From the IMG/VR virus record IMGVR_UViG_3300037245_001419, positions 147,778 through 211,777 of that record: DNA of 64,000 nucleotides; one strand, 5' to 3'. Positions 41,639 to 62,772 of the stretch are shown in pieces; position 1 is the stretch's first letter; every line of letters starts with the position of its first letter. Position numbers and translations under genes: made by a program. Under the pieces are notes generated by a model. The model had not been told where the DNA came from and searched no databases. It was given only the letters and a program-made list of their open reading frames with translations.

Positions 41639-41741
41639 AATAATCCTTTTATATAAAAAAAACTGAAGTATAATATATCGGAGTAAATATAAAATACTTC
41701 AGTTTATCTGATAGGGTAGATAAGTTATCAGAGTAATTTTT

Positions 41742-49260: not shown

Positions 49261-49266
49261 GATACT

Positions 49267-49563: not shown

Positions 49564-49743
49564 TTAGTTAACCTCCCATGGTTTGTTGTTAACGCCTTCT
49601 AACTCTGCATGAGTATAAAGTCTTGGTTTGAAAATGCTTGGAATAGTCATACCTGGTGTAGGGTTGCGATTAAACTCTTCTGCAGCACAGAACACAGGTT
49701 TTGTTTTAACGAGCGCATCCAGGTGTTTGACTAGATCAATCAC
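49564..49743 (-). CDS. HLDTLV...PWEV family protein
   Basis: GTG start; KHLDALVK ... KPWEVN*. Confidence 0.8.
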   Translation of the reverse strand: MIDLVKHLDALVKTKPVFCAAEEFNRNPTPGMTIPSIFKPRLYTHAELEGVNNKPWEVN

Positions 49744-50069
49744 GGAGGACATCCTTCGTCATAATCATATGTGTGTGGCCCATCTTCGCCAGCTTTCATT
49801 TCGACCACCCAATCCAGATATTCTTTAGATGGTTCATCTAGATCAAAGCGATGATCAATCGTTCCGTCTCTCCATTTCGCTACAGATATGAGAACCTTCG
49901 TACCTTTTGCTATACGAGCACATTGATCCATGACCCATGTCTTATGATGTTCTCCATCGATTCCACCATACTTCTCAATCCAAAGTAACATCCAATCATG
50001 TATCTTGTAAGAGCTATATTCATTTGGATCAGCCATTGGGAATTCCCCTAAGTAATTTTCTTCAGACAT
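49740..50069 (-). CDS. conserved phage hypothetical protein
   Basis: YGGIDGEHHKTWVMDQ motif. Confidence 0.8.
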   Translation of the reverse strand: MSEENYLGEFPMADPNEYSSYKIHDWMLLWIEKYGGIDGEHHKTWVMDQCARIAKGTKVLISVAKWRDGTIDHRFDLDEPSKEYLDWVVEMKAGEDGPHTYDYDEGCPP

Positions 50070-50143
50070 TGAGTTTCCTTTAGGTTGTAAAAAAGCTCCA
50101 GGCTGAGTACTATTACCCTAGTACAGCCCAAAAGCACATTACT

Positions 50144-50323
50144 TTAGTTATTGATCTTCAATGGGCATTTGATAGATTCTCCTGACAATGCACTTGCTAA
50201 AAATCTTTTTACTTTTGGATGACTGCAATATGATGCAGTTCCACTTGTACACCCATAATTGAACCGTTTGATGCCACCATATTGGCACACTCCGGTTTTG
50301 GATAATTCGCACGGATAACTCAT
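50144..50323 (-). CDS. small Cys-containing protein (59 aa)
   Basis: GGAG RBS; MSYPCELSKTGVCQY...CPLKINN* ending in AACTAAAGTA. Confidence 0.65.
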   Translation of the reverse strand: MSYPCELSKTGVCQYGGIKRFNYGCTSGTASYCSHPKVKRFLASALSGESIKCPLKINN

Positions 50324-50352
50324 ATTTCTCCCAGGTAAACCCGATCATTTTA

Positions 50353-50408
50353 AACTAAAGTATAATAGAAACTTATAGACGTGTCAATAGAATAAATGTA
50401 CTTTAGTT
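50353..50408. promoter_or_regulatory. class-II bidirectional promoter
   Basis: minus TTGACA-17-TATACT and plus TAGACG-17-TACTTT, bounded by inverted AACTAAAGTA. Confidence 0.75.
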
Positions 50409-50440
50409 AACTCTATTAATTTAAACATAAGGAATGCTAA

Positions 50441-50869
50441 ATGAGAGTTTTATTACTAAGCATAATAACAATCATGATTGGTTGTGCTGGAATACCTGTA
50501 AACTACCATAACGATCATCCTCGGCTGAACGGATCTAAACACACATATATAGGACAAGACATATACTTTGAAGAGTTCATTATCGGAGAGGGTGATTATT
50601 CAGGTTATATTTTTGGTAACAGTTGTCGTTATGAGCTTATTCTTATGATGGTATCAAAGTCAAAGGTTGTCATAGAATATAATGAATATATAAAATCTAG
50701 TTCCTATGGTGAGTTTCGCATGGATGGGCCTTGGCTCATAAGACAAGGATTCACTAAACAATTCGAATATGAACTTACAGATGGAAAAGGTGAGATCGCA
50801 TATAAAAAATTAAGATTTGTTATTGTTGGGGTTGAAAATCACGGAATATCAACTATTAGGTCAAACTAA
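50441..50869 (+). CDS. lipoprotein
   Basis: MRVLLLSIITIMIGC lipobox. Confidence 0.75.
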   Translation: MRVLLLSIITIMIGCAGIPVNYHNDHPRLNGSKHTYIGQDIYFEEFIIGEGDYSGYIFGNSCRYELILMMVSKSKVVIEYNEYIKSSSYGEFRMDGPWLIRQGFTKQFEYELTDGKGEIAYKKLRFVIVGVENHGISTIRSN

Positions 50870-50886
50870 AGTAAAAAGGAAATAAC

Positions 50887-51939
50887 ATGAAGATAATAAT
50901 ACTATTAGTATTATCAATTTTGTCGGCTGTAAGTGGCGCAAACATAGATGAAGATTATTTAATTTGTCGAGAATTTGAAAAGAAAAAGGATTGGCCTAAA
51001 GTAATTGATTATTGTGACAAATCTATAAAAAACAAGCCTGAAGGCAACAACCCATATTATAAGTTATGTCTAGCACATAGTATGGTAGGCAATAATGAGA
51101 AAGCTCTTGAAAATTGCACCATAGTTATAGTTCGTAAAAAATTAAGTCTAGATTTACAATACTCGTCATATTATTATAGAGCGTTGGCAGGTTATAATTT
51201 AAAGTATTATGATAAAGCTATATCTGATATAGATAATGCTATCACATTAAACAAAAAAGGTATGGCGCAATATATATTACAAGGTAAAATTAGATATAGT
51301 TTAAGTGAATATAAAAAAGCGGATATAAGTTTTTCTCATGTTATCAACCAGGATCGCAATAATTACACTGCAACATATGGTAGATATCTTGCAAGGTTAA
51401 AGTTAGGTAATTACAAAGGTGCATACACTGATATAACATATGCCATAGATATTAATAAAACCAAAGAAATATCCAAGTTATATGTATTACGTGGCATAGT
51501 ATCGAGTAAATTGTCTAGGCACAAGCAGTCATTTGCTGATTTTGATCACGCACTTAGTATAGATTCTACAAATTATAACTCACATATTGGAATAGCAAAA
51601 CTTAAACATAAATTGTGCGACTATTACGGTGCTATTCGTTCATATAACCATGCTATAAAATTAAGTGTCAATAATTCATCAATTTTAACACATCGTGCAG
51701 ATTCATGGTCGGAATTAGGTGAATATAAAAAAGCATTCGCAGACTGCAACCTTGCTATTAAAATAGATGCTAACTACGCAGAAGCATATTATATGCGTGG
51801 TATTATACAATTAAAACGAAATATACTAGACAATAAAGGGTTATATGATTTGTCTATAGCTGCAAATTTGGGTATGTTTGAGGTATATAAAGTTTTAAGT
51901 GAAATACACAATGAACGAAAATCAATCAAACTAAAGTAG
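50887..51939 (+). CDS. secreted tetratricopeptide-repeat protein
   Basis: signal peptide; repeated 34-aa units such as YYYRALAGYNLKYYDKAISDIDNAITL. Confidence 0.9.
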   Translation: MKIIILLVLSILSAVSGANIDEDYLICREFEKKKDWPKVIDYCDKSIKNKPEGNNPYYKLCLAHSMVGNNEKALENCTIVIVRKKLSLDLQYSSYYYRALAGYNLKYYDKAISDIDNAITLNKKGMAQYILQGKIRYSLSEYKKADISFSHVINQDRNNYTATYGRYLARLKLGNYKGAYTDITYAIDINKTKEISKLYVLRGIVSSKLSRHKQSFADFDHALSIDSTNYNSHIGIAKLKHKLCDYYGAIRSYNHAIKLSVNNSSILTHRADSWSELGEYKKAFADCNLAIKIDANYAEAYYMRGIIQLKRNILDNKGLYDLSIAANLGMFEVYKVLSEIHNERKSIKLK

Positions 51940-51965
51940 TATAAATATTGGTAAAAGAGGTACAG

Positions 51966-52127
51966 ATGGCTTACTATCCTAATCATCCACCTACGCTATA
52001 TGGTGACGATGCAGATTATTTTTTAAACAAGTTAGATGAGATTGCTAAGCTTCCTAAGCAAGTAATATCTGATGAAAAGCGTAAGAAGTTTGAAGAGTTA
52101 TTCAGAAGATCCGGTATGCGACTCTAA
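51966..52127 (+). CDS. small hypothetical protein
   Basis: GAGG RBS; stop overlaps the convergent gene. Confidence 0.6.
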   Translation: MAYYPNHPPTLYGDDADYFLNKLDEIAKLPKQVISDEKRKKFEELFRRSGMRL

Positions 52128-52468
52128 AGTACTTCCCATGGATCACACTCACGTTGATCATTGTTCATCATATATCTGCAGAGGTTATCGATATTAGCTG
52201 AAGTATCGTAACCAGGTTTGTAGTTATATTGTTTTAGTACATTGGAGTATAGTTTGCTACCATCGTAAACCCTATTTCTATTTTTGTATTCAACTGTGTA
52301 TAAGCAGTTATTAGGATCAGCCATATCAACCCATCGTCCAATCTTGATATCACCATCAACTAAAGTATAATTCATTTTCAGTGTATAGGCTTTTAACATA
52401 GCGTTATACAATCTATCACATTCAGGAGTTCTTGGCCCAACTAAAGTATCCAGGTGTTTAGGGTTCAT
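52124..52468 (-). CDS. HLDTLV...PWEV family protein
   Basis: MNPKHLDTLVGP ... DPWEVL*. Confidence 0.85.
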   Translation of the reverse strand: MNPKHLDTLVGPRTPECDRLYNAMLKAYTLKMNYTLVDGDIKIGRWVDMADPNNCLYTVEYKNRNRVYDGSKLYSNVLKQYNYKPGYDTSANIDNLCRYMMNNDQRECDPWEVL

Positions 52469-52668
52469 GTTACTTCCCATGGTTCGTTGTATGAATCTGA
52501 GAAGGATATGACACTAATATCACATCCTTCTGGACATAGATATTCGAGAGTTTTTGATATTCCATCTGGGGTATATTCTAAGTATGTAAGCATAAGTTTA
52601 AATTGTATATGATGGATTTTGCAATGATCGCAAGGCCCAACTAAAGTATCAAGGTGTTCTATATTCAC
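52465..52668 (-). CDS. HLDTLV...PWEV family protein
   Basis: EHLDTLVGP ... EPWEVT*. Confidence 0.85.
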   Translation of the reverse strand: MNIEHLDTLVGPCDHCKIHHIQFKLMLTYLEYTPDGISKTLEYLCPEGCDISVISFSDSYNEPWEVT

Positions 52669-52669
52669 T

Positions 52670-53020
52670 TTAGTTTACTTCCCATGGTTCATAAGAACTA
52701 TCCGTATTGCGAGCAAGCATTTTACATTTCTCATCTAAAGACGTAAATCCAATATCGTCAGTAGTACCATTGATATCATGAGTTATATTATCATCGAACA
52801 CCCATATACACCCTGATGTATCCGTTTTAAATACCCTAAGCATTTTAGAACTAACTATGCCAGGGTTATCAATTTTTACTTCGATTGTAAATATACCATC
52901 AGATATAACATCCCCTACTACACAATCATAATACGTTAATAATATAAATTTGTGTAGTTTTTTATATAGATGGCACTTCGGCCCAACTAAAGTATCAAGG
53001 TGTTCAACTAGTTCATTCAC
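52670..53020 (-). CDS. HLDTLV...PWEV family protein
   Basis: GTG start; EHLDTLVGP ... EPWEVN*. Confidence 0.85.
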   Translation of the reverse strand: MNELVEHLDTLVGPKCHLYKKLHKFILLTYYDCVVGDVISDGIFTIEVKIDNPGIVSSKMLRVFKTDTSGCIWVFDDNITHDINGTTDDIGFTSLDEKCKMLARNTDSSYEPWEVN

Positions 53021-53021
53021 T

Positions 53022-53330
53022 TTAGTTAACTTCCCATGGGTTCGAGACATAGGTTAGAGAACTCGGTCTATAACGGCATGAGTACACATAGACAACAGCA
53101 TCAAATATTTCTGCTTTAATATCTTTGCGGACTTCGAAACGATCACAACCTACTTCAGTTATAAATCCTTCCTCGATAAGCCTATCTCTTGTGCTCTCGA
53201 TAATCTTTACTCGATTCTGAGATGGGAATAGAACTTCCCGTTCGACATCTCTATAGAACTTATCCCATATGATTCTCTCATACCCATCGGGTTTAACTAA
53301 AGTATCAAGGTGTTTAATGAGATCAACCAT
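53022..53330 (-). CDS. HLDTLV...PWEV family protein
   Basis: KHLDTLVKP ... NPWEVN*. Confidence 0.85.
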   Translation of the reverse strand: MVDLIKHLDTLVKPDGYERIIWDKFYRDVEREVLFPSQNRVKIIESTRDRLIEEGFITEVGCDRFEVRKDIKAEIFDAVVYVYSCRYRPSSLTYVSNPWEVN

Positions 53331-53511
53331 ACCACTCCATATCTAGAGTACATATTATTTTAACTCCACAGTTGGGACATTTACCATAAGCGTCTTTCAT
53401 GTAATATATTGTACCTTTTGGATAAGATTCTTTAATCTTCAGTACTTTAAACTTTACATACTTCCTGCAGTTCTCACATGTCTTTTCAGCATATTCTTTT
53501 TCAATTTCCAT
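53323..53511 (-). CDS. small zinc-ribbon protein
   Basis: CENC...CPNC. Confidence 0.7.
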   Translation of the reverse strand: MEIEKEYAEKTCENCRKYVKFKVLKIKESYPKGTIYYMKDAYGKCPNCGVKIICTLDMEWYG

Positions 53512-53512
53512 A

Positions 53513-53836
53513 CTAAAGTACTTCCCATGGTATTGGTTTAATATATATTCCCATAATAAGAAGTGCTTTAGCTTCTGTTCGGATTTTTTCAGGAGAATGG
53601 CATATCATACGATAGCTATCATATTCATACGTTATTACATTTTCACTATCTGACATATATTCACAATGTATTACTATACGTCCATTGTGTTGATTATAGA
53701 TTCTAATGGTATCCGTATTGATAATCTGTCTGTTACTATGCATAGCCTTTTTAAAGTCTTCACATACGTCATTAATTCGTATGGTACGCTCGTCCGGCCC
53801 AACTAAAGTATCCAGGTGTGTTATTCTACTGTCCAC
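53513..53836 (-). CDS. HLDTLV...PWEV family protein
   Basis: THLDTLVGP ... IPWEVL*. Confidence 0.85.
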   Translation of the reverse strand: MDSRITHLDTLVGPDERTIRINDVCEDFKKAMHSNRQIINTDTIRIYNQHNGRIVIHCEYMSDSENVITYEYDSYRMICHSPEKIRTEAKALLIMGIYIKPIPWEVL

Positions 53837-54186
53837 GGCTCACTGATTCCTTTAGATCTAATCAACATCCTACATTTATCATCGAGGTCAACCAATCCCT
53901 TTCCTTCTCTAGATATATTAGTAGAAATATTACTTTTAAATATGTACAATTGTACTTTAGTTTCGACATTAGTAATTATGTAACAAAGTTCATTCCTGGT
54001 TACATTACCGTTAAAATCTGCAGTATCAGCTAAAGCACCAACGCACATGTGATATGGATATTCATCAATAACATCATCTGCTTTAAGATCCATGGCTGGA
54101 AACTGAAGTATAAAGTCATACAGTTTTTGATGATGTGGGGATCTGCTCCCAACTAAAGTATCAAGGTGTTTTACAATCTCGTACAT
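53821..54186 (-). CDS. HLDTLV...PWEV family protein
   Basis: KHLDTLVGS ... EPWTVE*. Confidence 0.85.
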   Translation of the reverse strand: MYEIVKHLDTLVGSRSPHHQKLYDFILQFPAMDLKADDVIDEYPYHMCVGALADTADFNGNVTRNELCYIITNVETKVQLYIFKSNISTNISREGKGLVDLDDKCRMLIRSKGISEPWTVE

Positions 54187-54613
54187 ACTGCCCCAGGTTG
54201 TTATTTAGATCAGCGATGTAATCAGCTAGTTCCTTCCCTATGACACCATAAGGAAATAGTTCTTCACCGTGTTCAGTCTCTATAACTTTGCACCAACAGT
54301 CCTTCCCATCAAAGCAATCTTTAACTATCCACTTGCAAATGAACGGCTCTATATTCTTAAGGACAAACTCTGCAGTATCTTCATCCATATCGGTCAATAC
54401 TTTAGTTACCTTCATATTGTGTATATCAGTGATGTATTTAGCCATCTCTTTAGGCATACAGAAGTACTCGAACACTTCATAATCATTATCAGGCCATTGA
54501 TCCGTTACAACCAGATCTACATGGTCTCCATACTTATTAATACAACCTACGACCCACTTTAGTTTATATGAGTCTTCTTGTTGTTTAATGTATTTCTTCT
54601 CGTCCCAGGTCAT
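54161..54613 (-). CDS. hypothetical protein with internal duplication
   Basis: KWVV...KEMAKYITDIHN repeated as KWIV...KELADYIADLNN. Confidence 0.75.
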   Translation of the reverse strand: MTWDEKKYIKQQEDSYKLKWVVGCINKYGDHVDLVVTDQWPDNDYEVFEYFCMPKEMAKYITDIHNMKVTKVLTDMDEDTAEFVLKNIEPFICKWIVKDCFDGKDCWCKVIETEHGEELFPYGVIGKELADYIADLNNNLGQYVRDCKTP

Positions 54614-54990
54614 ACAACCTCATATATGTATATGGTGTTTTTAACAATGTCATCCCAGTATCGTTCAAGAGCAGGAGGATATATAACCATAGCACCTTTT
54701 TCTGTCGTAGCCACAGCTATAATATTTGCAGGATCTAGGCTTTGTATTACGTTGGTTGCAATCACGTCATCAACGTCATCACAGTTAACAATCTTATTAA
54801 TTGGCGTAAGTTCCATTAACTTTAGTTTCTCTTCCAGGGTCTCGACTTCTGGCAAATCTTTGACAAGTTTTTCGATAGAATCTGTCATTAATACTGGACG
54901 CATATCAACCGTAGCGTCAAGATCTAACGCATAACGGAATTTGTTATCTGAGTTTGTAACAACCAGATTTGCAACTATATATTTTTTCAT
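54610..54990 (-). CDS. hypothetical protein
   Basis: GGAG-TACTTTAGTT-ATG start. Confidence 0.7.
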   Translation of the reverse strand: MKKYIVANLVVTNSDNKFRYALDLDATVDMRPVLMTDSIEKLVKDLPEVETLEEKLKLMELTPINKIVNCDDVDDVIATNVIQSLDPANIIAVATTEKGAMVIYPPALERYWDDIVKNTIYIYEVV

Positions 54991-55008
54991 AACTAAAGTA
55001 TCTCCCAC

Positions 55009-55398
55009 TTAGTCTTCTAGATAATGGATTTCAGGTTCTGCAGATTCTTCATACATGACAATAGCGTACATATCTCTCATACCGGAACCATCAGCTATAT
55101 GTGGTTTGATCCAATCGAGGAATGTTTCTATCTCATCCTCATAATTTTTTATATTGCATCTACTAGATAAGTGCCATGCCTTCGATATTTTGTCAAACCA
55201 CATCTTTGCAACTGGATCTATTACACCGAAGTAATAACTTCCAGATCCATTCACAGGGTTCCTCATATCACAAAAATCTTGTATGACTTTAGATTTATCG
55301 TGGTCAATATCAAAGAGATACTTGCATGTTTCTATAATTTCTGGTGGGGTATTTTCGTGAAGTCTTGCCCCAAATATTAGTTCTGTGTACATTCCCAT
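55009..55398 (-). CDS. conserved phage hypothetical protein
   Basis: MGMYTEL...IKNYEDEIETFLDWI. Confidence 0.8.
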   Translation of the reverse strand: MGMYTELIFGARLHENTPPEIIETCKYLFDIDHDKSKVIQDFCDMRNPVNGSGSYYFGVIDPVAKMWFDKISKAWHLSSRCNIKNYEDEIETFLDWIKPHIADGSGMRDMYAIVMYEESAEPEIHYLED

Positions 55399-55411
55399 AA
55401 TTCCTCCGGTT

Positions 55412-55467
55412 AACTAAAGTATAATAGAAACTTGTAGACGTGTCAATAGAATTAATGTACTTTAGTT
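55412..55467. promoter_or_regulatory. class-II bidirectional promoter
   Basis: near-identical to 50353-50408. Confidence 0.75.
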
Positions 55468-55470
55468 TCA

Positions 55471-55621
55471 GCCGGAGAATCGGAATACAGGTGATTCTCT
55501 AAGAGAGTCTGCGACATGGCATAACATCTGAACGGTTTCTATAGAAGTAGGTGCAAGTTATATAGAGGTGCTAGTAAGATGGCCTAGGATAGTTGTACTC
55601 TGTCCTCCCAGACTCTTTTTT
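55471..55621 (+). ncRNA. candidate structured RNA or long 5' leader
   Basis: GC-richer; 8-bp hairpin, then an 11-bp long-range stem (55501-11/55609-19) enclosing further helices, ending in a T run. Confidence 0.45.
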
Positions 55622-55643
55622 AAACTAAAGTAAATAGGAAGTT

Positions 55644-56309
55644 ATGAAAACGATATTAATATTAATAGTGCTGCTATCATCTATGGGTTTTTCAAATCAG
55701 TGCATTAGACTTGACGATTCAGATGCTTATGTCGATTGTTTAATTAAGGCAAATGAGGGTAAAGAAGAACCAGAATCTAAACAAGTAGAGTATATAGAAG
55801 ATTATTATACACATAATGAGGATTCATTAAGAATATATACACTTGTCGGAGCTGGTTATACACAGGGAACCTTTACTAGTTTTAGTAAAATTAACATGTT
55901 TATTGGCGTTATACCAGAAGGTTGGAATAACGGAATTATGTTCAGTGTTAAGATTTCAAATACAAAACCATCTAATATAAAAGATACATCACCACATAAT
56001 TCTAAAGTTTACCGCATTGTCGATGGTGAGATACTTCAACTAAATTTAGGTTTTCCATTCCCATTGCATAATAATATATTTTTGATTCCTATTGTGGGAG
56101 TGGCATCGGTAGAGAGATACACCCAAATCCTCGATGGGGATGATGGTACATATCATGTAAAAAAAGATAGAGACTCTTATAATGTTTTTGGTATGGGGTT
56201 CTTATTTAAAACTAATCGTTTTATTTGGGGAGTTGACATTGAATATCCTTTTGATAGATTCCCAACGATAGGAATTAATATAGGATTATTTATTACGGAG
56301 TTAAACTAA
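55644..56309 (+). CDS. secreted protein, probable outer-membrane beta-barrel
   Basis: signal peptide; alternating amphipathic strands (FGMGFLF, WGVDIEY, IGINIGLF). Confidence 0.6.
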   Translation: MKTILILIVLLSSMGFSNQCIRLDDSDAYVDCLIKANEGKEEPESKQVEYIEDYYTHNEDSLRIYTLVGAGYTQGTFTSFSKINMFIGVIPEGWNNGIMFSVKISNTKPSNIKDTSPHNSKVYRIVDGEILQLNLGFPFPLHNNIFLIPIVGVASVERYTQILDGDDGTYHVKKDRDSYNVFGMGFLFKTNRFIWGVDIEYPFDRFPTIGINIGLFITELN

Positions 56310-56320
56310 AGTAGGTTACG

Positions 56321-56500
56321 ATGAAAGATATTAAGAAAGGTTACTACTGGGTAAAGTTTTACAACCATGATGTAATGCAAGTAATGTTATTTAATGGCAA
56401 GAATTTTGAAGGCTTCAAGAGTGACAAATTAATTCATGATGAGATAGAGGGTTACGAGTATATTGATTACCCACCAGTTGACTTGTGTATCGACAACTAA
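56321..56500 (+). CDS. small hypothetical protein
   Basis: MKDIKKGYYWVKF...; stop within the shared AACTAAAGTA. Confidence 0.65.
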   Translation: MKDIKKGYYWVKFYNHDVMQVMLFNGKNFEGFKSDKLIHDEIEGYEYIDYPPVDLCIDN

Positions 56501-56814
56501 AGTACTTCCCATGGCCCACCCTTCGATGGAGTACTCCACGATAGTGTAAAATACTTGGTTGCTAGTTCAGTAATATCGTCATGCATATATAGTAGAACAT
56601 AATATGGTCGTGAGGGTTCCCAGTATTTAGATTTCTCTAAGACATTTTTGTCTATAAGAACGATCCTCATATCGACAAACACTTCGTTATTGTAGAAATT
56701 ATGGAAAGGATCAGTAAGAGCCTTCACTATTTGCTTTACTAGTTTACCGTATATCTTAGATGCGAACTCAGAGGGTTCAACTAAAGTATCAAGGTGTTTA
56801 ATAATTTCAGTCAT
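56497..56814 (-). CDS. HLDTLV...PWEV family protein
   Basis: KHLDTLVEP ... GPWEVL*. Confidence 0.85.
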   Translation of the reverse strand: MTEIIKHLDTLVEPSEFASKIYGKLVKQIVKALTDPFHNFYNNEVFVDMRIVLIDKNVLEKSKYWEPSRPYYVLLYMHDDITELATKYFTLSWSTPSKGGPWEVL

Positions 56815-57005
56815 ACTTTAATATCTTTTTTATTGGCTATTACTAGTCCATTATCATTCAGTGTTTTAATAAATTCATGCCACTCTATGGTATATGGTGG
56901 AGCGTAATCGTACCCATCATTAAACAATTCACCTTCAACTACCATTTCCATCTTAGGAAATAATCGTTTTAACCGTTCAATCAATAATCTATGCTGGTTT
57001 TTCAT
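56811..57005 (-). CDS. hypothetical protein
   Basis: uses GGAGGT in the upstream WEV codons as RBS. Confidence 0.7.
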   Translation of the reverse strand: MKNQHRLLIERLKRLFPKMEMVVEGELFNDGYDYAPPYTIEWHEFIKTLNDNGLVIANKKDIKV

Positions 57006-57008
57006 ACT

Positions 57009-57311
57009 TTAGTTTACCTCCCATGGTGGGCATATTAAATAAAGTGTAGTAATTGATTTACAATAACTGTCTAATATGATATTAGCTATAGAACTTCCAT
57101 CATAATCAATTACAAATGGTTTTGCATTCTTGTATGTTATCTCAAAACGTTTAATATGATTATCAGTCACGTTGACAATTTTAATATTATTATCAGAATA
57201 TGTACAATCTTTAATTGATAGCTTATCAAATGTAGAAGTTAATAGATTGTGTAAATCTATGTATTCCTGGGGTATCGGCCCAACTAAAGTATCCAGGTGT
57301 TGTATATTCAC
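57009..57311 (-). CDS. HLDTLV...PWEV family protein
   Basis: QHLDTLVGP ... PPWEVN*. Confidence 0.85.
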   Translation of the reverse strand: MNIQHLDTLVGPIPQEYIDLHNLLTSTFDKLSIKDCTYSDNNIKIVNVTDNHIKRFEITYKNAKPFVIDYDGSSIANIILDSYCKSITTLYLICPPWEVN

Positions 57312-57312
57312 T

Positions 57313-57702
57313 TTAGTTTACCTCCCAGGGCTTCATAGAATCAATGTTTTTAATTCTATATGTATGATGAGTTCCCAGATGGGTGTTCGCTTGTGTCATA
57401 TAGCTGTTCTCAACCAATGATATGTAATGTTCCACATCACAATCTTCAAATATTATCATCACTTCACCCTCACCAGTTTTCATAAAGGTTGCATGTCCAT
57501 CATCTACTACAAGGTGCTTAATCTCAGTAAGACTACGCTCATAAAATGAGTGGTATAGTTCCATATCGGCATATACTTCATAAACAAACAATGGCTGATT
57601 TAAAAAATCATCCACAATGGTTGATAGATAGTGATAATATATTGGTGGTACACTACCAGATATTATCGGCCCAACTAAAGTATCCAGGTGATCGACATTC
57701 AA
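57313..57702 (-). CDS. HLDTLV...PWEV family protein
   Basis: DHLDTLVGP ... KPWEVN*. Confidence 0.85.
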   Translation of the reverse strand: MNVDHLDTLVGPIISGSVPPIYYHYLSTIVDDFLNQPLFVYEVYADMELYHSFYERSLTEIKHLVVDDGHATFMKTGEGEVMIIFEDCDVEHYISLVENSYMTQANTHLGTHHTYRIKNIDSMKPWEVN

Positions 57703-57703
57703 T

Positions 57704-58015
57704 TTAGTTTACTCCCCATGGATCACCATACGGTTTAGCATCTACTAGCATCATTAGAGTTTCAGTTATATATCTATCTGCAGCAGGATTTATGCGATAC
57801 ACAGGGTTTCTAGATGAGTATCGTCCTTTCATGGACTTAGTTACAAGCTTAAGTTTTATAAGTCTTTCCCTAAGTTCCACCACAGTACAATCGCTATAGA
57901 ACATAGCGGATGGATCTGTCAGTCCTGCTTTGATTAAAGGGCACATACTTTCTTGTCTGTCCGCATGTCTAGTACATGGTTTAATTAAAGTATCAAGATG
58001 TTTAATATCATTCAT
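57704..58015 (-). CDS. HLDTLV...PWEV family protein
   Basis: KHLDTLIKP ... DPWGVN*. Confidence 0.85.
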   Translation of the reverse strand: MNDIKHLDTLIKPCTRHADRQESMCPLIKAGLTDPSAMFYSDCTVVELRERLIKLKLVTKSMKGRYSSRNPVYRINPAADRYITETLMMLVDAKPYGDPWGVN

Positions 58016-58252
58016 CTGGTGGTCGGTTCCTTATTTCTTCCATGATTTGTTCCGAGCGGCATCTACTTAGCCCACCGAGGATATTAAGGATAAAGAATGC
58101 GGCGAATATCAATAGGAACAGTTCCATACTAAAGTACATCCTTACCAGTCATAGCAGAGAATGCCCATGTGATAGCGACAATGAGTACAACGGTTTCCCA
58201 CAGATGTGAGTAAATAAATTCTATAACTTCCAACATAATGTCTCCTAGGTGT

Positions 58253-58328
58253 AACTAAAGTATATTTTAAATATGTACTATTGTCAATAAAAATATAGAC
58301 AGATACATGGAATATATTTACTTTAGTT
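58253..58328. promoter_or_regulatory. class-II divergent promoters
   Basis: minus TTGACA-17-TATACT; plus TAGACA-17-TACTTT. Confidence 0.7.
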
Positions 58329-58425
58329 AAAACGTAAGGGAGCAAGAGACTTTCACACTCGGACGATTGAGACCTCTCATAACATGAAGATAGCGTTCCC
58401 TTATTTTAAACTAAAGTAGGATTAT

Positions 58426-58668
58426 ATGAAAGAATACGAATATATTGAACAGAATCATCATGTTGAAACTGATACTTCAGTTAAATCTCTTAATAATGGG
58501 CCATGTATAGCTGAGATTCAACTATATGGTGGTGAAGAAACTCACTTCATCCTGAATACTGGTCATGAGGATAAATTTGTAATTGCAGTTGAGGGATACG
58601 ATGGCTTAGAGATCCGACACTTCGGAAAAGCTAGATTGTTCCCTGTTTATGGTCTGCGGTTAAAGTAA
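58426..58668 (+). CDS. hypothetical protein
   Basis: AGGA RBS. Confidence 0.7.
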   Translation: MKEYEYIEQNHHVETDTSVKSLNNGPCIAEIQLYGGEETHFILNTGHEDKFVIAVEGYDGLEIRHFGKARLFPVYGLRLK

Positions 58669-58671
58669 TTA

Positions 58672-58704
58672 TAGACAATTCAATTGAAAATATGTACTTT
58701 AGTT
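58672..58704 (+). promoter_or_regulatory. class-II promoter
   Basis: TAGACA-17-TACTTT(AGTT). Confidence 0.6.
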
Positions 58705-58731
58705 GATACAGTACTTTAAATTGGATCATTT

Positions 58732-59043
58732 GTGAAATATTTAATAATTTTAATACTATGTATGTCGTTTGGATCTGCTTTAGCTGATGACACTGAAGAT
58801 ATTACTCTTGATGAGTTGTGTAAATATGCTGGATATGCGTACATGTTAGGTGATGTGTCTGTATATAATGAGGTACTGCAGCAAGCGTTTGAACAAATAC
58901 AAGTACCACCAGGTGACAGCCTTGAAATAACAACACGTAGATGTTGGGATTTGGTTGATAATAGTAAAAAACTAGGTCTTCCTATCAGTGAAAGTGATGC
59001 AATAGCAAAAAAATTAGTTCGTCTTAACAATCAACTAAAGTAG
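58732..59043 (+). CDS. secreted protein, paralog of 62410-62697
   Basis: signal peptide ending ALA; LCKYAGYA. Confidence 0.75.
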   Translation: MKYLIILILCMSFGSALADDTEDITLDELCKYAGYAYMLGDVSVYNEVLQQAFEQIQVPPGDSLEITTRRCWDLVDNSKKLGLPISESDAIAKKLVRLNNQLK

Positions 59044-59155
59044 TATTGATATGATTCAAAATTGTTATGCTTGCAATAATTATGACACAAAAAAATGCGA
59101 TGGATGTCGCCATTATTCAAATCATAGTGACAACAACAAAACTAAGTAGGATATA

Positions 59156-59896
59156 ATGAGTAAATATAATATACTAGTAACACCAGAAGATAAGCATTAC
59201 GGTGCTGTATGGTTGGATGCGTTAAGAGGGAAGTTATATTACTTTTTCCGTGAGGAAGAGATACCGGAAGAATCTTTGTTAGATTATATCGAGAACGAGA
59301 AGCATGGCATCATAGATAATCTAACAACCTTCAGTAAGTATTCATTATTTAATGCTAGAAGTGTTGTAGAGGCTGAAGGTTATGCTATGTGTAAACAGAT
59401 TGACGGTAGTCTACCAAATACAGTTTACAAGTTTTGGCCGTTCGAAGCCCTTAAGGATATCTGTAAAGAGCCTTCACTTGATAGACGGGAGTTTGAAAGA
59501 GTCATACACATTGAGCGTTCAGTGGCAAAGGGAGGGGCTTTTGTATCTCATACTGGACATGAAAGTGGTGCATGTTCATTAGGATTCAGATATGAGAGAA
59601 TAATTCGGTGCGCTGATAAGAGTGTGCAAGGTGATTATCAATATTTTGAGCTTCCACACCAGGAAGATTTTCTTACATACAAGCCTAAGAATTCTGACAA
59701 GCGAAATAGACCTAACATCTATGGCTCAGTAGTTAAATACACTGCAGAACTATATGAAATGATTGAACAGACAGCTATGAGTTTTAGAGAGTTAAACGAT
59801 AGACTGTTAGATATAATAAAACCTGAGAGTCTTATATCTATATCTGATAGTGGTGTTAAAGTGCTGCCACTTACAACTAAAGTAGGATCAGAATGA
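59156..59896 (+). CDS. hypothetical protein
   Basis: AGGA RBS, 246 aa. Confidence 0.75.
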   Translation: MSKYNILVTPEDKHYGAVWLDALRGKLYYFFREEEIPEESLLDYIENEKHGIIDNLTTFSKYSLFNARSVVEAEGYAMCKQIDGSLPNTVYKFWPFEALKDICKEPSLDRREFERVIHIERSVAKGGAFVSHTGHESGACSLGFRYERIIRCADKSVQGDYQYFELPHQEDFLTYKPKNSDKRNRPNIYGSVVKYTAELYEMIEQTAMSFRELNDRLLDIIKPESLISISDSGVKVLPLTTKVGSE

Positions 59897-60174
59897 AGGA
59901 CGTAATTGGTTGGATTGTATTTGTAGTGTTGTTTTGTATTGTATTATATGTAATTGGCTGGCTTATGGTTGTCAATTTCGGCCCAGAAGCTCAGAACGAT
60001 GAGATTAAGAACCGAGATTACAAGTACGAGGTGACGTGTAGTGTTAACGGTAAAACGGTAACAAAGCATTTTTTGGATTGTTACTCTGGTGAAAGTGGAT
60101 TGCGGTGTGGTAATAGCCGTAGTACTTCATTTTTATGTCAGGGTAATTACAGTTACATACTAGTTCCAAGGTAG
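59893..60174 (+). CDS. membrane-anchored protein
   Basis: N-terminal TM helix. Confidence 0.7.
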   Translation: MKDVIGWIVFVVLFCIVLYVIGWLMVVNFGPEAQNDEIKNRDYKYEVTCSVNGKTVTKHFLDCYSGESGLRCGNSRSTSFLCQGNYSYILVPR

Positions 60175-60180
60175 GATATA

Positions 60181-60567
60181 ATGATTATACCATTTCAAAT
60201 GAAAATATTTAATGAAGAAGATTTTCTTTCATATCCTCGTCATAAAAGTACGATTGTAATTATTAGCATGTGTTATAAAGGATTTGGCTTGAAACTGCCA
60301 AACTTCACGCAATGTGAAGTTGAATGGTATTGGCATGGATGTGTCGATGGCGTTCATGCAGGAGATACACAAGAATTTTCTACAAACGACACTATGGAAC
60401 AATATAAAAATAAAGGGTGGCGTTTAGTCGTTAGTATAAAACAAAATAAACGGAGTTCTCCTATACAATTGAAGGACAAATGTTTATGGCAATATGACGA
60501 ACTCTATAGAACTGATTTAGAGTTAGCTATGCATAGAGCTACACAAGGAAATCAGTATGTAAAGTAG
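60181..60567 (+). CDS. hypothetical protein
   Basis: AGGA RBS. Confidence 0.65.
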   Translation: MIIPFQMKIFNEEDFLSYPRHKSTIVIISMCYKGFGLKLPNFTQCEVEWYWHGCVDGVHAGDTQEFSTNDTMEQYKNKGWRLVVSIKQNKRSSPIQLKDKCLWQYDELYRTDLELAMHRATQGNQYVK

Positions 60568-60608
60568 GACTCAAACTAAAGTATCCAGTTATTTAACGGT
60601 TACTTTAG

Positions 60609-60794
60609 TTATGCCTTCATAATACTGATATAGTTTTCCATACATTTAAGAGAGCATAGGACTATCGTATAGGGTCTTAAGCTGTGTCCGTGTATAGAAT
60701 GCTTAGTGATAGAGAACCATGACTGACCATGTCCCATAGCCTTATAATCGAACTCTGTGGTACATGCGTTGCATATTTGTTTAGAATCTTTCAC
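60609..60794 (-). CDS. small Zn-finger protein
   Basis: CNAC...CSLKC. Confidence 0.65.
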   Translation of the reverse strand: MKDSKQICNACTTEFDYKAMGHGQSWFSITKHSIHGHSLRPYTIVLCSLKCMENYISIMKA

Positions 60795-61063
60795 TTTATT
60801 TTAAGAGTAATTTGAAACAGGACACCGTCCTTAATATACGATTCGATATCTGCGTTTCTAGATGAATGAGATGATATACGGAGATTGTTTGCTTGTAATA
60901 TAATAATTTTATTTTTTCTATAGTCGAATACAAGCAAACAAGGGTTAGGGTCATTCTCACTCATCACAGCGTATTGTGCTTTCCCTTCAGTTATATTCTT
61001 AATAACCTCATCAGCATTCCATGTAATAGTTGTTTTGTTTTGTCTAGTTATAACTCTTTTCAT
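60791..61063 (-). CDS. hypothetical protein
   Basis: GAGGA RBS, 4-nt overlaps. Confidence 0.7.
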   Translation of the reverse strand: MKRVITRQNKTTITWNADEVIKNITEGKAQYAVMSENDPNPCLLVFDYRKNKIIILQANNLRISSHSSRNADIESYIKDGVLFQITLKIK

Positions 61064-61317
61064 TGGTCATCCTCTAATACGTTTGGATATGTCATATTAT
61101 TGTGTGCATCTACTTCATGATCCCACAAGATAGCTTGCAGCATTTCAGTTGAGATACTTTCTTGTGAATATGGTCTGCATATAGTTTTAGTCTCTTTCAG
61201 AAATGTTTTGTACAGCTGAGCATGAGTAGAAGCTGTGATAGTTTTAACTACATGGCCCCAATCTAAAGAGCAGAAGTATTTAAATGTTATCTGGTATGTT
61301 GGTTTAATTTCTTTCAT
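61060..61317 (-). CDS. hypothetical protein, probably leaderless
   Basis: ATG 6 nt after the TATACT -10 box. Confidence 0.65.
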   Translation of the reverse strand: MKEIKPTYQITFKYFCSLDWGHVVKTITASTHAQLYKTFLKETKTICRPYSQESISTEMLQAILWDHEVDAHNNMTYPNVLEDDQ

Positions 61318-61373
61318 AACTAAAGTATAATAGAAAGTTATAGACATGTCAATAGAAAGTAATTACTTTAGTT
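61318..61373. promoter_or_regulatory. class-II bidirectional promoter
   Basis: third near-identical copy. Confidence 0.75.
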
Positions 61374-61397
61374 AATAACGTTATATAAGGAGTTATT

Positions 61398-61832
61398 ATG
61401 GCAAAGAAGTTAGTAGTTAAGAAAGGTTATACAGTTGAAGTTGTCTCATGGGAGAATGATGGAGACCATTACAGCACTATGTCAAAGACTTATGACACTG
61501 CAGAAAAGGCGTTATGTGTAAAGAAGCTGTGTAACGAGTTGTTTTCTTGTTATCACTCTGGTGCTGAAATTGGCATTGGAAATATATGTGACGACTATGA
61601 AATGGCACGAGATAGAACGCTGGTGTACTTAAAAAAGAACCTTAATGTTCTAAAGTTATTTGCAACACGAGCGGATATAGAACTTAAAGATGAAGAAACA
61701 CTCGTTCAGATAGTAATGAATATTAACTTTGATCTACTGGGTGGTTCAGATGTTTATAATTCACGGATATGTGAAAGATGTGAAGTATCCTACTCTGCAG
61801 AAGATATTCACGTAGAAGTTATCAACAAGTAA
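61398..61832 (+). CDS. conserved phage hypothetical protein
   Basis: GYTVEVVSWENDGDHY motif; AAGGAG RBS. Confidence 0.8.
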   Translation: MAKKLVVKKGYTVEVVSWENDGDHYSTMSKTYDTAEKALCVKKLCNELFSCYHSGAEIGIGNICDDYEMARDRTLVYLKKNLNVLKLFATRADIELKDEETLVQIVMNINFDLLGGSDVYNSRICERCEVSYSAEDIHVEVINK

Positions 61833-61859
61833 TCTACACATTGAAAGAGAAGAAATAAT

Positions 61860-62225
61860 ATGTACAGTTTAAATCATACTTTAGTTTGTCAGGAATGCAG
61901 TAAAAAGTTCCTGGGTCGTCTAAACGGCAAGTTCTGTTCTGGTATATGTGGCAGGAGACATTGGAATAAGAACAACACTGAGAGGATCGCAAAGAGCCAT
62001 GATAAGTGGTATATAGCTAATCGTGATACTATTATGGAAAAGAATAAGGAGTATCGTAAAAAGAATAAAGAACCTATTTCAAAGTATCATATCGACTATT
62101 ACAAAGAGAATCGAGACTTGATTAATGATCGAGCTAAAGCATATCATAAGGATAATCGTGATAATATATTACCTCGTATGCGTGCGTATTCAGCTAACAT
62201 GCGTAAGAATAACAAACTAAAGTAG
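61860..62225 (+). CDS. Zn-finger plus basic helical-repeat protein (homing-endonuclease-like N-terminus, no nuclease)
   Basis: CQEC...FCSGIC then YYKENRD-type repeats. Confidence 0.7.
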   Translation: MYSLNHTLVCQECSKKFLGRLNGKFCSGICGRRHWNKNNTERIAKSHDKWYIANRDTIMEKNKEYRKKNKEPISKYHIDYYKENRDLINDRAKAYHKDNRDNILPRMRAYSANMRKNNKLK

Positions 62226-62409
62226 GGCTGAATGGATCAAGAAGAGAAGGTTTGTACCTGGTCATATTCTAACAATTCATTTATGGGTTTTCGAGAGTTT
62301 GAGTATAACACTAGTTGTAATAGAAATTATGACGCTGATATAATCAGACCAATTAATCCTAAGCACTGCCCTAATTGTGGTGGTAAAATAAAACATAGTA
62401 AGTAGGAAT

Positions 62410-62697
62410 ATGAAAACAATTATATTAATGGTGCTGATATGTACTTCAGTTTATTCATCTGACTTTAGCGAGTACGAAACAAAGTCTCTATGTGCATATG
62501 CAGGTTATGCTATTCATGTAAAAGACAAGTTTATGGCATCCGTGTCTCTTAGAATTGCTACCCATAGAGGTGACAGTATAGTATTTGATTGTGGACAGAT
62601 AGCATTGAAGGTAGTTGTATCTAAGAAGATGCCTAGTGGTTTTGATGAGTATCAAAATGACTTCTATAACATCGTTACATATAAATTATTAAACTAA
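62410..62697 (+). CDS. secreted protein, paralog of 58732-59043
   Basis: signal peptide; LCAYAGYA. Confidence 0.75.
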   Translation: MKTIILMVLICTSVYSSDFSEYETKSLCAYAGYAIHVKDKFMASVSLRIATHRGDSIVFDCGQIALKVVVSKKMPSGFDEYQNDFYNIVTYKLLN

Positions 62698-62772
62698 AGT
62701 ATTTTACGTAAAATGTTGACAATATAACAGATTTGTTATATTATTACTATAAAATATAACAATAGGTTACGT

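What the first reader, a model, noticed from the sequence alone, without database searches (positions are those of the whole stretch)
50353..61373. 56-bp bidirectional promoter module whose two -10 boxes are built from the 10-mer
Seen: 50353-50408, 55412-55467 and 61318-61373 are near-identical: AACTAAAGTA-taatagaaa..TAGAC[G/A]TGTCAA..TACTTTAGTT. They read TTGACA-17-TATACT leftward and TAGACR-17-TACTTT rightward with back-to-back -35 boxes. 58253-58328 and 58672-58704 keep the exact 17-nt spacing with different spacers. These modules sit where the tagged-protein and other minus-strand operons diverge from plus-strand islands, several of which encode secreted proteins. Inference: a protein bound to the 10-mer would occlude both -10 boxes, co-regulating the two gene sets separately from class-I promoters.
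Basis: partly seen in the sequence, partly recalled or inferred. Interest (0 to 1): 0.62.

Follow-up and report, generated by a model that had tools for sequence, protein, structure and literature searches.

The report
Divergent early-promoter cassette in T4-like phage
Three near-identical 56-bp blocks in the variable end of an uncultured T4-like phage genome are most likely two-way early promoters, and their ends are copies of a 10-base word that is about 100 times over-represented across the genome and whose own function is still unknown.

Summary
The repeats at 50353-50408, 55412-55467 and 61318-61373 are 88-96% identical, and the similarity stops exactly at the outer edges of the two inverted 10-mers. 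Each block sits between divergent genes.

Leftward it reads TTGACA-17-TATACT, among the best sigma-70 matches in the 14 kb scanned. In copy 3 and in a relative (G002), an ATG lies exactly 6 nt after the -10, which suggests a leaderless mRNA.

Rightward it reads TAGACR-17-TACTTT. This pattern occurs only five times in the 212-kb genome, always on the + strand and always with a + ORF or a structured leader downstream. It recurs in G002 (about 70% nucleotide identity), whose flanking genes are unrelated. No RNA data could be obtained, so no transcription start site is shown.

The regulatory inference is weaker:
- The 10-mer AACTRAAGTA is genome-wide: 243 exact copies against 2.5 expected.
- Most copies lie inside genes, in both orientations, and appear to be under DNA-level selection.
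- It also sits inside the "class-I" promoters, directly after their -35.
- It therefore cannot define a separate regulon.

The closest known kind is the PeSL regulatory cassette of T4-type phages. I rate this a new variant of a known kind, of moderate interest.

The parts
50353..50408 (.). 56-bp module, copy 1. Left arm AACTAAAGTA at 50353-50362. Leftward -10 TATACT (minus strand) at 50364-50359. Rightward -35 TAGACG at 50376-50381. Leftward -35 TTGACA (minus strand) at 50387-50382. Rightward -10 TACTTT at 50399-50404. Right arm TACTTTAGTT at 50399-50408. Inferred start sites are near 50352 (leftward) and 50411 (rightward), about 59 bp apart.
55412..55467 (.). 56-bp module, copy 2 (96% identical to copy 1). 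Leftward promoter at 55446-55418, rightward at 55435-55463.
61318..61373 (.). 56-bp module, copy 3 (88% identical). Leftward promoter at 61352-61324, rightward TAGACA-17-TACTTT at 61341-61369. The leftward -10 is followed after exactly 6 nt by the ATG at 61317, a leaderless arrangement.
58253..58328 (.). 76-bp variant module. It has the same two 10-mer arms. Leftward TTGACA-17-TATACT lies at 58287-58259 and rightward TAGACA-17-TACTTT at 58296-58324. The spacers are unrelated and the two -35 boxes are 8 bp apart.
58672..58704 (+). Rightward-only promoter of the same type (TAGACA-17-TACTTTAGTT), directly after the stop of ORF 58426-58668 and 28 nt before the GTG start of a signal-peptide ORF (58732-59043).
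50144..50323 (-). First leftward gene of copy 1 (59 aa). An SD-like GGGAGAA precedes the ATG at 50323, giving an inferred 5' UTR of about 29 nt.
50441..51939 (+). Plus-strand island served by copy 1: a lipoprotein-like ORF (50441-50869) and a signal-peptide TPR protein (50887-51939).
55009..55398 (-). First leftward gene of copy 2 (129 aa, phrog_4334). GGAGG lies 5 nt before the ATG at 55398. It heads the minus-strand block that contains the HLDTLVGP...PWEVN family.
55474..55625 (+). Non-coding, structured stretch after the rightward promoter of copy 2. It has an 11-bp closing stem followed by a U6 run, then a 10-mer, an SD and the ORF 55644-56309. It is a candidate small RNA or attenuating leader.
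58335..58412 (+). Shorter non-coding stretch after the 58296 promoter. A closing stem and U run are followed by a 10-mer, an SD and the ORF 58426-58668.
61060..61317 (-). First leftward gene of copy 3 (85 aa). It has no SD and its ATG abuts the module.
61398..62697 (+). Plus-strand island served by copy 3, four ORFs. AAGGAG precedes the ATG at 61398. Successive genes are joined by AACTAAAGTA copies that overlap the stop codons.
60574..60610 (.). Hairpin made of two 10-mers with a 17-nt loop, at the convergent junction between + genes (ending 60567) and - genes (ending 60609). It shows the same 10-mer used as a terminator-like stem.
   Evidence: z -5.6

Best explanation
The window is the last 64 kb of a 212-kb uncultured, distantly T4-like myovirus. 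The three 56-bp repeats are copies of a conserved divergent early-promoter cassette in its hyperplastic, ORFan-rich region.

Each cassette carries two sigma-70-type promoters with abutting -35 boxes:
- A strong leftward promoter (TTGACA-17-TATACT) serves minus-strand operons, including the HLDTLVGP...PWEVN family.
- A weaker rightward promoter (TAGACR-17-TACTTT) serves short plus-strand islands, several of which have signal peptides.

The inferred start sites are about 59 bp apart, so two polymerases would probably compete rather than bind together. The persistent TAGACR, one base away from consensus, keeps the two directions unequal.

The cassette ends are inverted copies of AACTRAAGTA. This genome-wide word is selected at the DNA level and here happens to supply the -10 boxes. 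Because homology between copies ends exactly at those words, the cassette probably spread by recombination at them, as proposed for PeSL cassettes of T4-type phages.

Shown: the sequence anatomy, the gene arrangement, conservation within the genome and in one relative, and the genome-wide statistics of the 10-mer.
Inferred: both promoter activities, the start sites, promoter competition and the recombination route.
For: Phage identity:
- T4-type DNA polymerase, large terminase, tail sheath and RNR.
- The polymerase is only about 31% identical to cultured T4-like cyanophage and Pelagibacter-phage polymerases.
- TATAAATA late promoters lie upstream of the structural genes.

Leftward promoter:
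- It scores 11 of 12 against consensus, the top score in 14 kb.
- The hexamers and 17-bp spacing are kept with unrelated spacers at 58287, at genome position 47342, and in G002 at 89443 and 85503.
- Two independent cases have an ATG exactly 6 nt after the -10 (window 61317; G002 89443).

Rightward promoter:
- All 5 of the genome's TAGAC-N18-TACTTYAGTT sites are here, on the + strand, and each has a + ORF or structured leader downstream.
- G002 has TAGACG-17-TACTTTAGTT followed by AGGAG and an ATG, at 81% identity to copy 2, although the neighbouring genes share no homology.
- A TTGACA-like -35 peaks at exactly 17 bp (and at 19 and 0 bp) upstream of TACTTTAGTT. There is no such peak for the C variant or the opposite orientation.
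- TAGACA is the -35 of other cassettes.
- No other divergent junction of the genome carries the module.

Variation among copies avoids all four hexamers.
The boundaries of the repeat fall exactly at the 10-mers.
PeSL precedent: PMC2839356 and PMC4122927.
Against: - There is no transcript or start-site evidence of any kind.
- The rightward hexamers score only 7-8 of 12 against the E. coli consensus and were not picked up by the consensus scan.
- A different rightward pair, TAGAAA-16-TAGAAT, exists inside copies 1 and 2, although copy 3 loses its -7 T.
- Only one independent relative (G002) exists in the collections searched, and its left arm is not an intact 10-mer.
- The host is unknown, so its sigma-factor preferences are assumed.
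- Two of the rightward promoters run straight into terminator-like structures, so they may make short RNAs rather than the mRNAs of the islands.
Confidence: 0.62

Rival explanations
1. Only the leftward promoter is real. The conserved TAGACR next to TGTCAA is one half of a pseudo-palindromic operator, T(T/A)GAC-NN-GTC(T/A)A, for a dimeric regulator. The + islands would then be expressed from another signal (for example TAGAAA-16-TAGAAT) or later in infection.
For: - The core is a near-palindrome. In copy 3, GACATGTC is a perfect 8-bp palindrome.
- The 12-mer TAGACGTGTCAA is identical in G002.
- The rightward hexamers are weak by consensus.
- An alternative -10, TAGAAT, exists in copies 1 and 2.
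Against: - TAGACA lies exactly 17 bp before TACTTTAGTT at 58296 and 58672, where no leftward -35 abuts it.
- TAGACA acts as the -35 in other cassettes.
- TACTTT pairs with canonical TTGACA at 17 bp in G002.
- The alternative -10 is lost in copy 3.
- No other upstream promoter is available for 50441 or 61398.
Confidence: 0.17
2. The module is mainly a protein-binding or recombination unit, and its promoter likeness is secondary. On this view the two inverted 10-mers are sites for a sequence-specific DNA-binding or recombination protein. That protein would mark cassette boundaries throughout the hyperplastic region and, when bound, shut both promoters.
For: - The 10-mer is about 100-fold over-represented.
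- It has a palindromic core whose positions 2 and 9 co-vary: A-T 243, G-C 52, T-A 15 and C-G 8, with no non-complementary combination above 13.
- It is retained at 15 of 39 orthologous positions in G002, against 6.7% for random 10-mers (p = 1e-8).
- It distorts codon and tripeptide usage inside genes.
- Homology between module copies ends at the 10-mers.
- It occupies preferred promoter positions -12, -10, -29 and about -50.
Against: - No binder has been identified.
- The ends of homology blocks between G000 and G002 are no closer to 10-mers than random points are.
- Most copies lie inside conserved genes, where recombination would be harmful.
- The G002 module lacks one arm yet keeps both promoters.
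Confidence: 0.15
3. The module is a hairpin: a bidirectional terminator, a cruciform, or a miniature mobile element with 10-bp terminal inverted repeats.
For: - The 10-bp arms are perfect inverted repeats.
- The same 10-mers do form a strong hairpin at the convergent junction 60574-60610 (z -5.6).
- They also form AACTGAAGTA...TACTTCAGTT stems with T runs elsewhere in the genome.
Against: - The 56-bp units fold no better than shuffled sequence (z -0.75 to -0.94, about -4 kcal/mol).
- No T run follows on either strand.
- The modules lie between gene 5' ends, where no terminator is needed.
- There are no target-site duplications.
- A 36-bp interior is too short for inversion by looping (general knowledge, not tested).
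Confidence: 0.04

Closest known systems
PeSL (promoter-early stem-loop) cassettes of T4-type phages (Arbiol et al. 2010, PMC2839356; Comeau et al. 2014, PMC4122927)
   Same: - Short, highly conserved composite regulatory cassettes with a sigma-70-like early promoter and 17-nt spacing.
- Present in several copies and concentrated in hyperplastic regions among ORFans.
- Conserved between related phages whose flanking genes differ.
- Proposed to spread and shuffle genes by recombination.
- This genome also holds canonical PeSL-type units, with an AACTGAAGTA-loop-TACTTCAGTT stem, a T run and then TTGACA-17-TATATT (for example window 35303-35341 and 38253-38290).
   Different: - The 56-bp module is bidirectional.
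- Its inverted repeats flank the promoters rather than forming a terminator upstream of one.
- The arms double as the -10 boxes.
- The arms are copies of a word that is also spread through coding sequence across the whole genome, which was not described for PeSLs.
Bidirectional bacterial promoters arising from -10 symmetry (Warman et al., bioRxiv 10.1101/2020.01.31.928960; PMC12825309)
   Same: - Pseudo-symmetric DNA that drives divergent transcription.
- The A variant of the 10-mer begins TACTTTA, which is the symmetric TAnnnTA form (read directly from the sequence; compared).
   Different: In that class the two -10 elements overlap and the start sites are about 18 bp apart. Here the two -35 boxes abut, the -10 boxes are 34 bp apart, and the inferred starts are about 59 bp apart.
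T4 middle promoters with a MotA box (Hinton 2010, PMC2988021)
   Same: The first seven bases of the 10-mer family, T(G/A)CTT(T/C)A, match the MotA-box core TGCTT(t/c)a, which has an invariant CTT. T4's P46 promoter even has an ACTT box.
   Different: - There is no enrichment of a -10 at 12 +/- 1 bp after the word.
- The word shows no orientation bias relative to genes.
- The genome gives no hit to the MotA C-terminal-domain (MotCF) or AsiA Pfam models.
- MotA acts as a monomer, whereas this word has a co-varying palindromic core.
Divergent phage switch regions controlled by operators (lambda PR/PRM; phi29 A2c/A2b-A3 with protein p4). Recalled from memory, not tested.
   Same: Closely spaced divergent promoters whose core elements overlap repeated protein-binding sites.
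   Different: Those operators are confined to the switch region and their binders are known. Here the repeated word occurs 243 times genome-wide and no binder is known.

Membership tests
Sigma-70-type promoter (leftward) | -35 TTGACA and -10 TATAAT-like hexamers separated by 17 +/- 1 bp | tested here: met
   TTGACA-17-TATACT scores 11 of 12 in all three copies and at 58287.
Sigma-70-type promoter (leftward) | A gene start in the right orientation just downstream | tested here: met
   ATG codons with an SD at 50323 and 55398, and a leaderless ATG at 61317 exactly 6 nt after the -10. G002 has the same geometry.
Sigma-70-type promoter (leftward and rightward) | A transcription start about 7 nt downstream of the -10 | not testable with these tools
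Sigma-70-type promoter (rightward) | Hexamers recognisable as a -35 and a -10 at 17 +/- 1 bp | tested here: inconclusive
   TAGACR matches 4-5 of 6 and TACTTT matches 3 of 6, keeping T-12, A-11 and T-7. The spacing is exactly 17 at 5 of 5 sites. The pair falls below the consensus-scan threshold. It is supported by the -35 phasing, by TAGACA use elsewhere and by G002.
PeSL cassette | A conserved multi-copy early promoter located in a hyperplastic region, flanked by genes that differ between related phages | tested here: met
   Three copies plus two variants lie within 11 kb of ORFans. Across this region, G002 shares only the promoter modules with G000.
PeSL cassette | A stem-loop terminator immediately upstream of the promoter | tested here: not met
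   In the module the inverted repeats enclose the promoters, the fold is not significant (z about -0.8) and there is no T run. Canonical stem-loop-plus-promoter units do exist elsewhere in the genome.
Bidirectional promoter through -10 symmetry (Warman type) | Overlapping -10 elements on opposite strands, with divergent starts 7-25 bp apart (mode 18) | tested here: not met
   The two -10 boxes of the module are 34 bp apart and the inferred starts about 59 bp apart.
T4 middle (MotA-dependent) promoter | A MotA box 12 +/- 1 bp upstream of a -10, and MotA and AsiA encoded by the phage | tested here: not met
   There is no peak of TAnnnT at a gap of 11-13. PF09158 and PF09010 are not found in the genome at E <= 1.
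T4 late promoter | TATAAATA at -10 | tested here: not met
   The module has no TATAAATA. This motif marks the structural genes at 80-145 kb instead.
Intrinsic terminator | A stable GC-containing hairpin followed by a T run at a gene 3' end | tested here: not met
   the modules lie between gene 5' ends.
Miniature inverted-repeat mobile element | Terminal inverted repeats plus a target-site duplication | tested here: not met
   The 10-bp inverted ends are present, but the flanks show no duplication. The 'ends' are a word with 243 copies in the genome.

The most novel reading that the evidence does not exclude
AACTRAAGTA, and its co-varying form AGCTRAAGCA, is the recognition site of an unidentified phage- or host-encoded dimeric DNA-binding or recombination protein. 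Selection keeps the site at about one per kb throughout the genome, even inside genes, and the phage has built its early regulatory parts from it: -10 boxes, promoter spacers, terminator stems and stop-codon junctions. Binding would then gate about 18 early promoters at once, including both directions of the 56-bp module. The shared word would also serve as the joint at which gene and promoter cassettes are exchanged between phages.
Probability: 0.2. Interest if true: 0.72.

Novelty: new variant of a known kind. Interest (0 to 1): 0.45.

Why it matters
Conserved promoter cassettes are thought to drive gene shuffling in the variable regions of T4-type phages. This would add a two-way version to that kind, in a lineage far from any cultured phage.

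It also shows one short word reused as a -10 box, a promoter spacer, a terminator stem, a stop-codon context and in-frame coding sequence.

If the word proves to be a protein site, it would give a testable handle on how such phages coordinate early genes and exchange cassettes. If not, the module is simply a compact natural divergent promoter with unequal arms.

Tried and rejected
- More relatives:
  - An exact 19-mer of the module in viral contigs gave 0 hits.
  - The two-arm pattern gave 21 loci, of which only G001 and G002 are motif-rich.
  - TTGACA-N16-18-TATACTTTAGTT gave over 115 mostly chance loci. The only extra motif-rich one, L119, is 99.4% identical to G000, as is G001.
  - A DNA-polymerase search gave only G002 and an identical fragment.
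  - Two metagenome scans and one genome-contig scan gave nothing or chance hits.
  - The phage collection has no nucleotide match.
- 10-mer as late promoter: rejected. Late promoters are TATAAATA.
- 10-mer as a Mot-type middle promoter: rejected.
- 10-mer as a directional promoter in general: rejected. The averaged flanks show no consensus and there is no strand bias relative to genes.
- 10-mer as a translation-level signal: the strong frame preference (N|ACT|NNA|GTN) is explained by codon usage.
- 10-mer as a recombination breakpoint between G000 and G002: no association was found, but the test is weak at 70% identity.
- Module as a hairpin or terminator: rejected.
- Module as an invertible switch: considered and set aside, because the 36-bp interior is too short and the G002 module lacks one arm. 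This was not tested.
- Rfam and ARAGORN found nothing in the leaders after the rightward promoters. The leaders have no homologues in G002.
- Pfam and PHROGs leave almost all flanking genes unnamed.

Full report
**Where the window lies.** The window is G000:C1:147778-211777, the last 64 kb of a 211,777-bp IMG/VR virus record that CheckV estimates at 93% complete. The genome encodes a T4-type family-B DNA polymerase, a large terminase, a tail sheath, a ribonucleotide reductase and a primase, as well as a DNA ligase and a tRNA nucleotidyltransferase. The polymerase is only about 31% identical to those of cultured T4-like cyanophages and a Pelagibacter phage, and there is no nucleotide match in the phage collection. 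TATAAATA lies upstream of many structural genes between 80 and 145 kb, so late transcription is of the T4 type. The finding lies in the last 14 kb, a stretch of small, mostly unnamed ORFs with alternating strand blocks.

**The observation.** They form one repeat family at 96% and 88% identity to copy 1. The sequence outside the arms is unrelated between copies, so the unit runs exactly from one 10-mer to its inverted partner.

- On the minus strand each unit reads TTGACA, 17 nt, TATACT. These and the copy at 58287-58259 are four of the six top-scoring (11 of 12) sigma-70 matches between 49000 and 63000.
- On the plus strand each reads TAGACR, 17 nt, TACTTT. The two -35 hexamers abut.
- The units at 58253-58328 and 58672-58704 keep the hexamers and the 17-nt spacing with unrelated spacers.
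- TAGAC-N18-TACTTYAGTT occurs five times in the whole genome, and all five are these sites, all on the + strand.
- The eight positions that vary among the three copies all avoid the four hexamers, apart from position 6 of TAGACR (p about 0.01).

**Gene context.** Every unit sits between divergent genes.

Leftward:
- Copy 1: an ATG at 50323 with an SD.
- Copy 2: an ATG at 55398 with GGAGG.
- Copy 3: an ATG at 61317 that abuts the module with no SD, exactly 6 nt after the -10. This is the geometry of a leaderless mRNA.
- The variant module at 58253-58328: two small membrane peptides (58129-58236 and 58008-58139).

Rightward:
- Copy 1: AAGGAA and the ATG at 50441 (a lipoprotein-like ORF), followed by a signal-peptide TPR protein.
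- Copy 3: AAGGAG and the ATG at 61398.
- Copy 2 and the promoter at 58296: these run first into non-coding stretches with a long closing stem and a U run (55474-55625 and 58335-58412). A 10-mer, an SD and an ORF follow. The folds are only marginally better than shuffles (z -1.9 and -1.5), and neither stretch matches Rfam.

No other divergent junction in the genome carries this module.

**Comparative evidence.** Only one independent relative was found, G002 (IMGVR_UViG_3300043172_001415, 104 kb).
- It is collinear with G000 positions 2.4-86 kb at about 70% nucleotide identity. Its remaining 26 kb shares nothing with the window at E < 1e-10.
- When the window's 49000-63000 was searched against it, the only matches were promoter modules.
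- G002 89413-89464 is 81% identical to copy 2. It reads TTGACA-17-TATACT leftward, again with an ATG 6 nt after the -10. Rightward it reads TAGACG-17-TACTTTAGTT followed by AGGAG and an ATG.
- G002 85454-85543 is a looser divergent pair: TTGACT-17-TATACT and ATGACA-17-TACTTTAGTT.
- The other motif-rich hits (G001, L119, L165) are 99-100% identical fragments of G000 from elsewhere in the genome, so they add nothing.

**Is TACTTT a real -10, and TAGACR a real -35?**
- A hexamer matching TTGACA at 5 of 6 or better was counted at every offset upstream of TACTTTAGTT. It peaks at spacers of 17, 19 and 0 in G000 (5, 8 and 8 sites) and at 17 in G002 (8 sites), against about 1 elsewhere. There is no peak for the TACTTCAGTT variant or for the opposite orientation.
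- The A variant of the word is therefore used as a -10 in two registers, TACTTT and TA+TACT, each paired with a TTGACA-like -35 at the right distance.
- TAGACA also replaces TTGACA in obvious promoter cassettes elsewhere, each followed by an SD and an ATG (window 14573, 22094 and 24795).
- The rightward half is thus a credible but weaker promoter.
- One base change would turn TAGACR into consensus, yet this has not happened in any of six sites. That suggests the inequality between the two directions is itself maintained.

**The 10-mer is not special to these modules.**
- AACTAAAGTA is the most frequent 10-mer in the genome (161 exact copies), followed by AACTGAAGTA (82) and AGCTAAAGCA (39). 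G002 shows the same ranking. Base composition predicts about 2.5 copies.
- Averaged over all 243 sites, the flanks carry no information.
- 63% of sites are inside genes, and orientation is unrelated to gene direction.
- Positions 2 and 9 co-vary (A-T 243, G-C 52, T-A 15, C-G 8, no non-complementary combination above 13). The core is therefore a palindrome, NCT-TY-AGN', with an asymmetric centre.
- At orthologous aligned positions, 15 of 39 sites are still a perfect motif in G002, against 6.7% of random 10-mers (p = 1e-8). This control is not matched for composition or coding position.
- Inside genes the motif distorts the proteome. The tripeptides TKV, TEV, TLV and TSV are 2-3.4 times over-represented, and they are written with the motif codons 6-18 times more often than codon usage predicts. 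The preferred reading frame is what codon usage alone would give.
- Selection therefore acts on the DNA word rather than on a peptide.

In intergenic DNA the word has been built into several kinds of signal:
- a -10 box (positions -12 or -10);
- the stems of hairpins followed by T runs that precede promoters, which is the canonical PeSL layout (the G variant, for example 22127-22156, 35303-35341 and 38253-38290);
- a hairpin at a convergent junction (60574-60610, z -5.6);
- the stop-codon context AAC-TAA-AGTA at gene ends;
- the junctions of a tandem family of 12 paralogues, whose C-terminus PWEVN-stop and N-terminus HLDTLVGP both encode the word.

The anatomy (two promoters, back-to-back -35 boxes, -10 boxes made from the arms) stands. 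The conclusion that a 10-mer binder would co-regulate these two gene sets separately from class-I promoters does not stand. The same word lies inside the class-I promoters and at some 200 other places. Whether any protein binds it is unknown. The co-varying palindromic core suggests a dimeric DNA-binding protein, but that is inference only.

**Comparison with known systems.**
- **PeSL cassettes.** The best match in kind is the PeSL of T4-type phages: conserved promoter-terminator cassettes concentrated in hyperplastic regions and thought to mediate modular shuffling. The module shares their location, copy number, promoter type and conservation across otherwise unrelated genes. It fails the defining stem-loop-upstream feature, and it is bidirectional.
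- **Symmetric -10 promoters.** It is not the symmetric -10 type of bidirectional promoter, because the inferred starts are about 59 bp apart rather than 18.
- **MotA box.** The first seven bases of the word resemble the T4 MotA box, including the T/C position and the ACTT variant of P46. However, there is no -10 at 12 +/- 1 bp and no hit to the MotA C-terminal-domain or AsiA Pfam models.

**Limits.**
- No start site, binder or host is known.
- Gene calls are my own ORF- and codon-score calls.
- Only one diverged relative exists.
- The test for breakpoints at 10-mers was negative but weak.

**Verdict.** The module is a new variant of a known kind. The more unusual thing is the genome-wide 10-mer, whose function remains open.

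Noticed in passing
whole window and genome (for example window 866-875 and 3581-3590; densest between 44000 and 63000): AACTRAAGTA is the most frequent 10-mer in the genome: 243 exact copies against about 2.5 expected. It is shared with the 70%-identical relative G002. Most copies lie inside genes, in both orientations, and 38% are retained at orthologous positions. Its function is unknown.
   Followed up: yes
genome-wide; the only intergenic examples are at window 43565-43574 and 48129-48138: A co-varying sister word, AGCTRAAGCA / TGCTTYAGCT, has 52 copies, 50 of them inside genes, where they encode A-K/E-A or A-L/S-A. Mixed half-sites (ACT..AGC or GCT..AGT) are almost absent. This suggests either recognition of a symmetric site or two separate specificities.
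   Followed up: partly
window 49267-58015, minus strand: A tandem family of 12 small paralogues has a conserved N-terminus (..HLDTLVGP) and C-terminus (PWEVN/L/T-stop). The gene junctions (about 58 nt) are up to 88% identical while the interiors diverge. Each junction forms a 10-mer hairpin that encloses the next start codon. The family is absent from G002 and has no Pfam or PHROG match.
   Followed up: partly
window 22127-22156, 33074-33083, 35303-35341, 37867-37876, 38253-38290 and 41661-41704 (minus-strand reading): Canonical PeSL-like units: an AAACTGAAGTA-loop-TACTTCAGTTT hairpin with a T run, followed directly by a T(T/A)GACA-17-TAnnnT promoter, a conserved leader and an SD.
   Followed up: partly
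window 12510-12525, 25793-25808, 29716-29731, 34232-34247, 36788-36803, 38760-38775 and 43520-43535 (minus strand): Seven copies of a conserved promoter-plus-leader cassette. TTGACA is followed directly by TACTTTAGTT, then AATWAGC, TATMTT, a short inverted repeat and AGGAG. Sister copies lack the 10-mer (for example 44569-44655) or use TAGACA as the -35 (24795).
   Followed up: partly
window 55474-55625 and 58335-58412, plus strand: Two non-coding stretches directly after rightward promoters, each closed by a long-range stem and a U run. They may be small RNAs or attenuating leaders. They have no Rfam match and no homologue in G002. G002 94635-94700 shows a promoter followed at once by a strong terminator and then a gene.
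   Followed up: partly
window 61317 (minus strand) and G002 89409-89443: Two independent cases of an ATG exactly 6 nt after a TATACT -10 with no SD, which suggests leaderless early mRNAs in this phage lineage.
   Followed up: no
window 63231-63908, inside ORF 62773 to beyond 63999 (plus strand): About 38 tandem copies of an 18-nt (6-codon) repeat lie inside a long ORF that runs off the contig end. The ORF is preceded by a TTGACA-17-TATTAT promoter at 62716-62744.
   Followed up: no
window 22596-22717, minus strand: Rfam reports a tRNA match of 32.3 bits (gathering score 29) spread over 122 nt for a 71-position model, while ARAGORN finds no tRNA in the window. It may be a tRNA with an insertion or a decayed one.
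   Followed up: no
genome 41304-41345 (outside the window; identical in L023 at 3687-3728): A shorter two-arm unit, AACTAAAGTA-N26-TACTTTAGTT with TTGACA inside, lies 3 nt upstream of a tRNA-like sequence. The arm design is therefore not confined to the 56-bp module.
   Followed up: no
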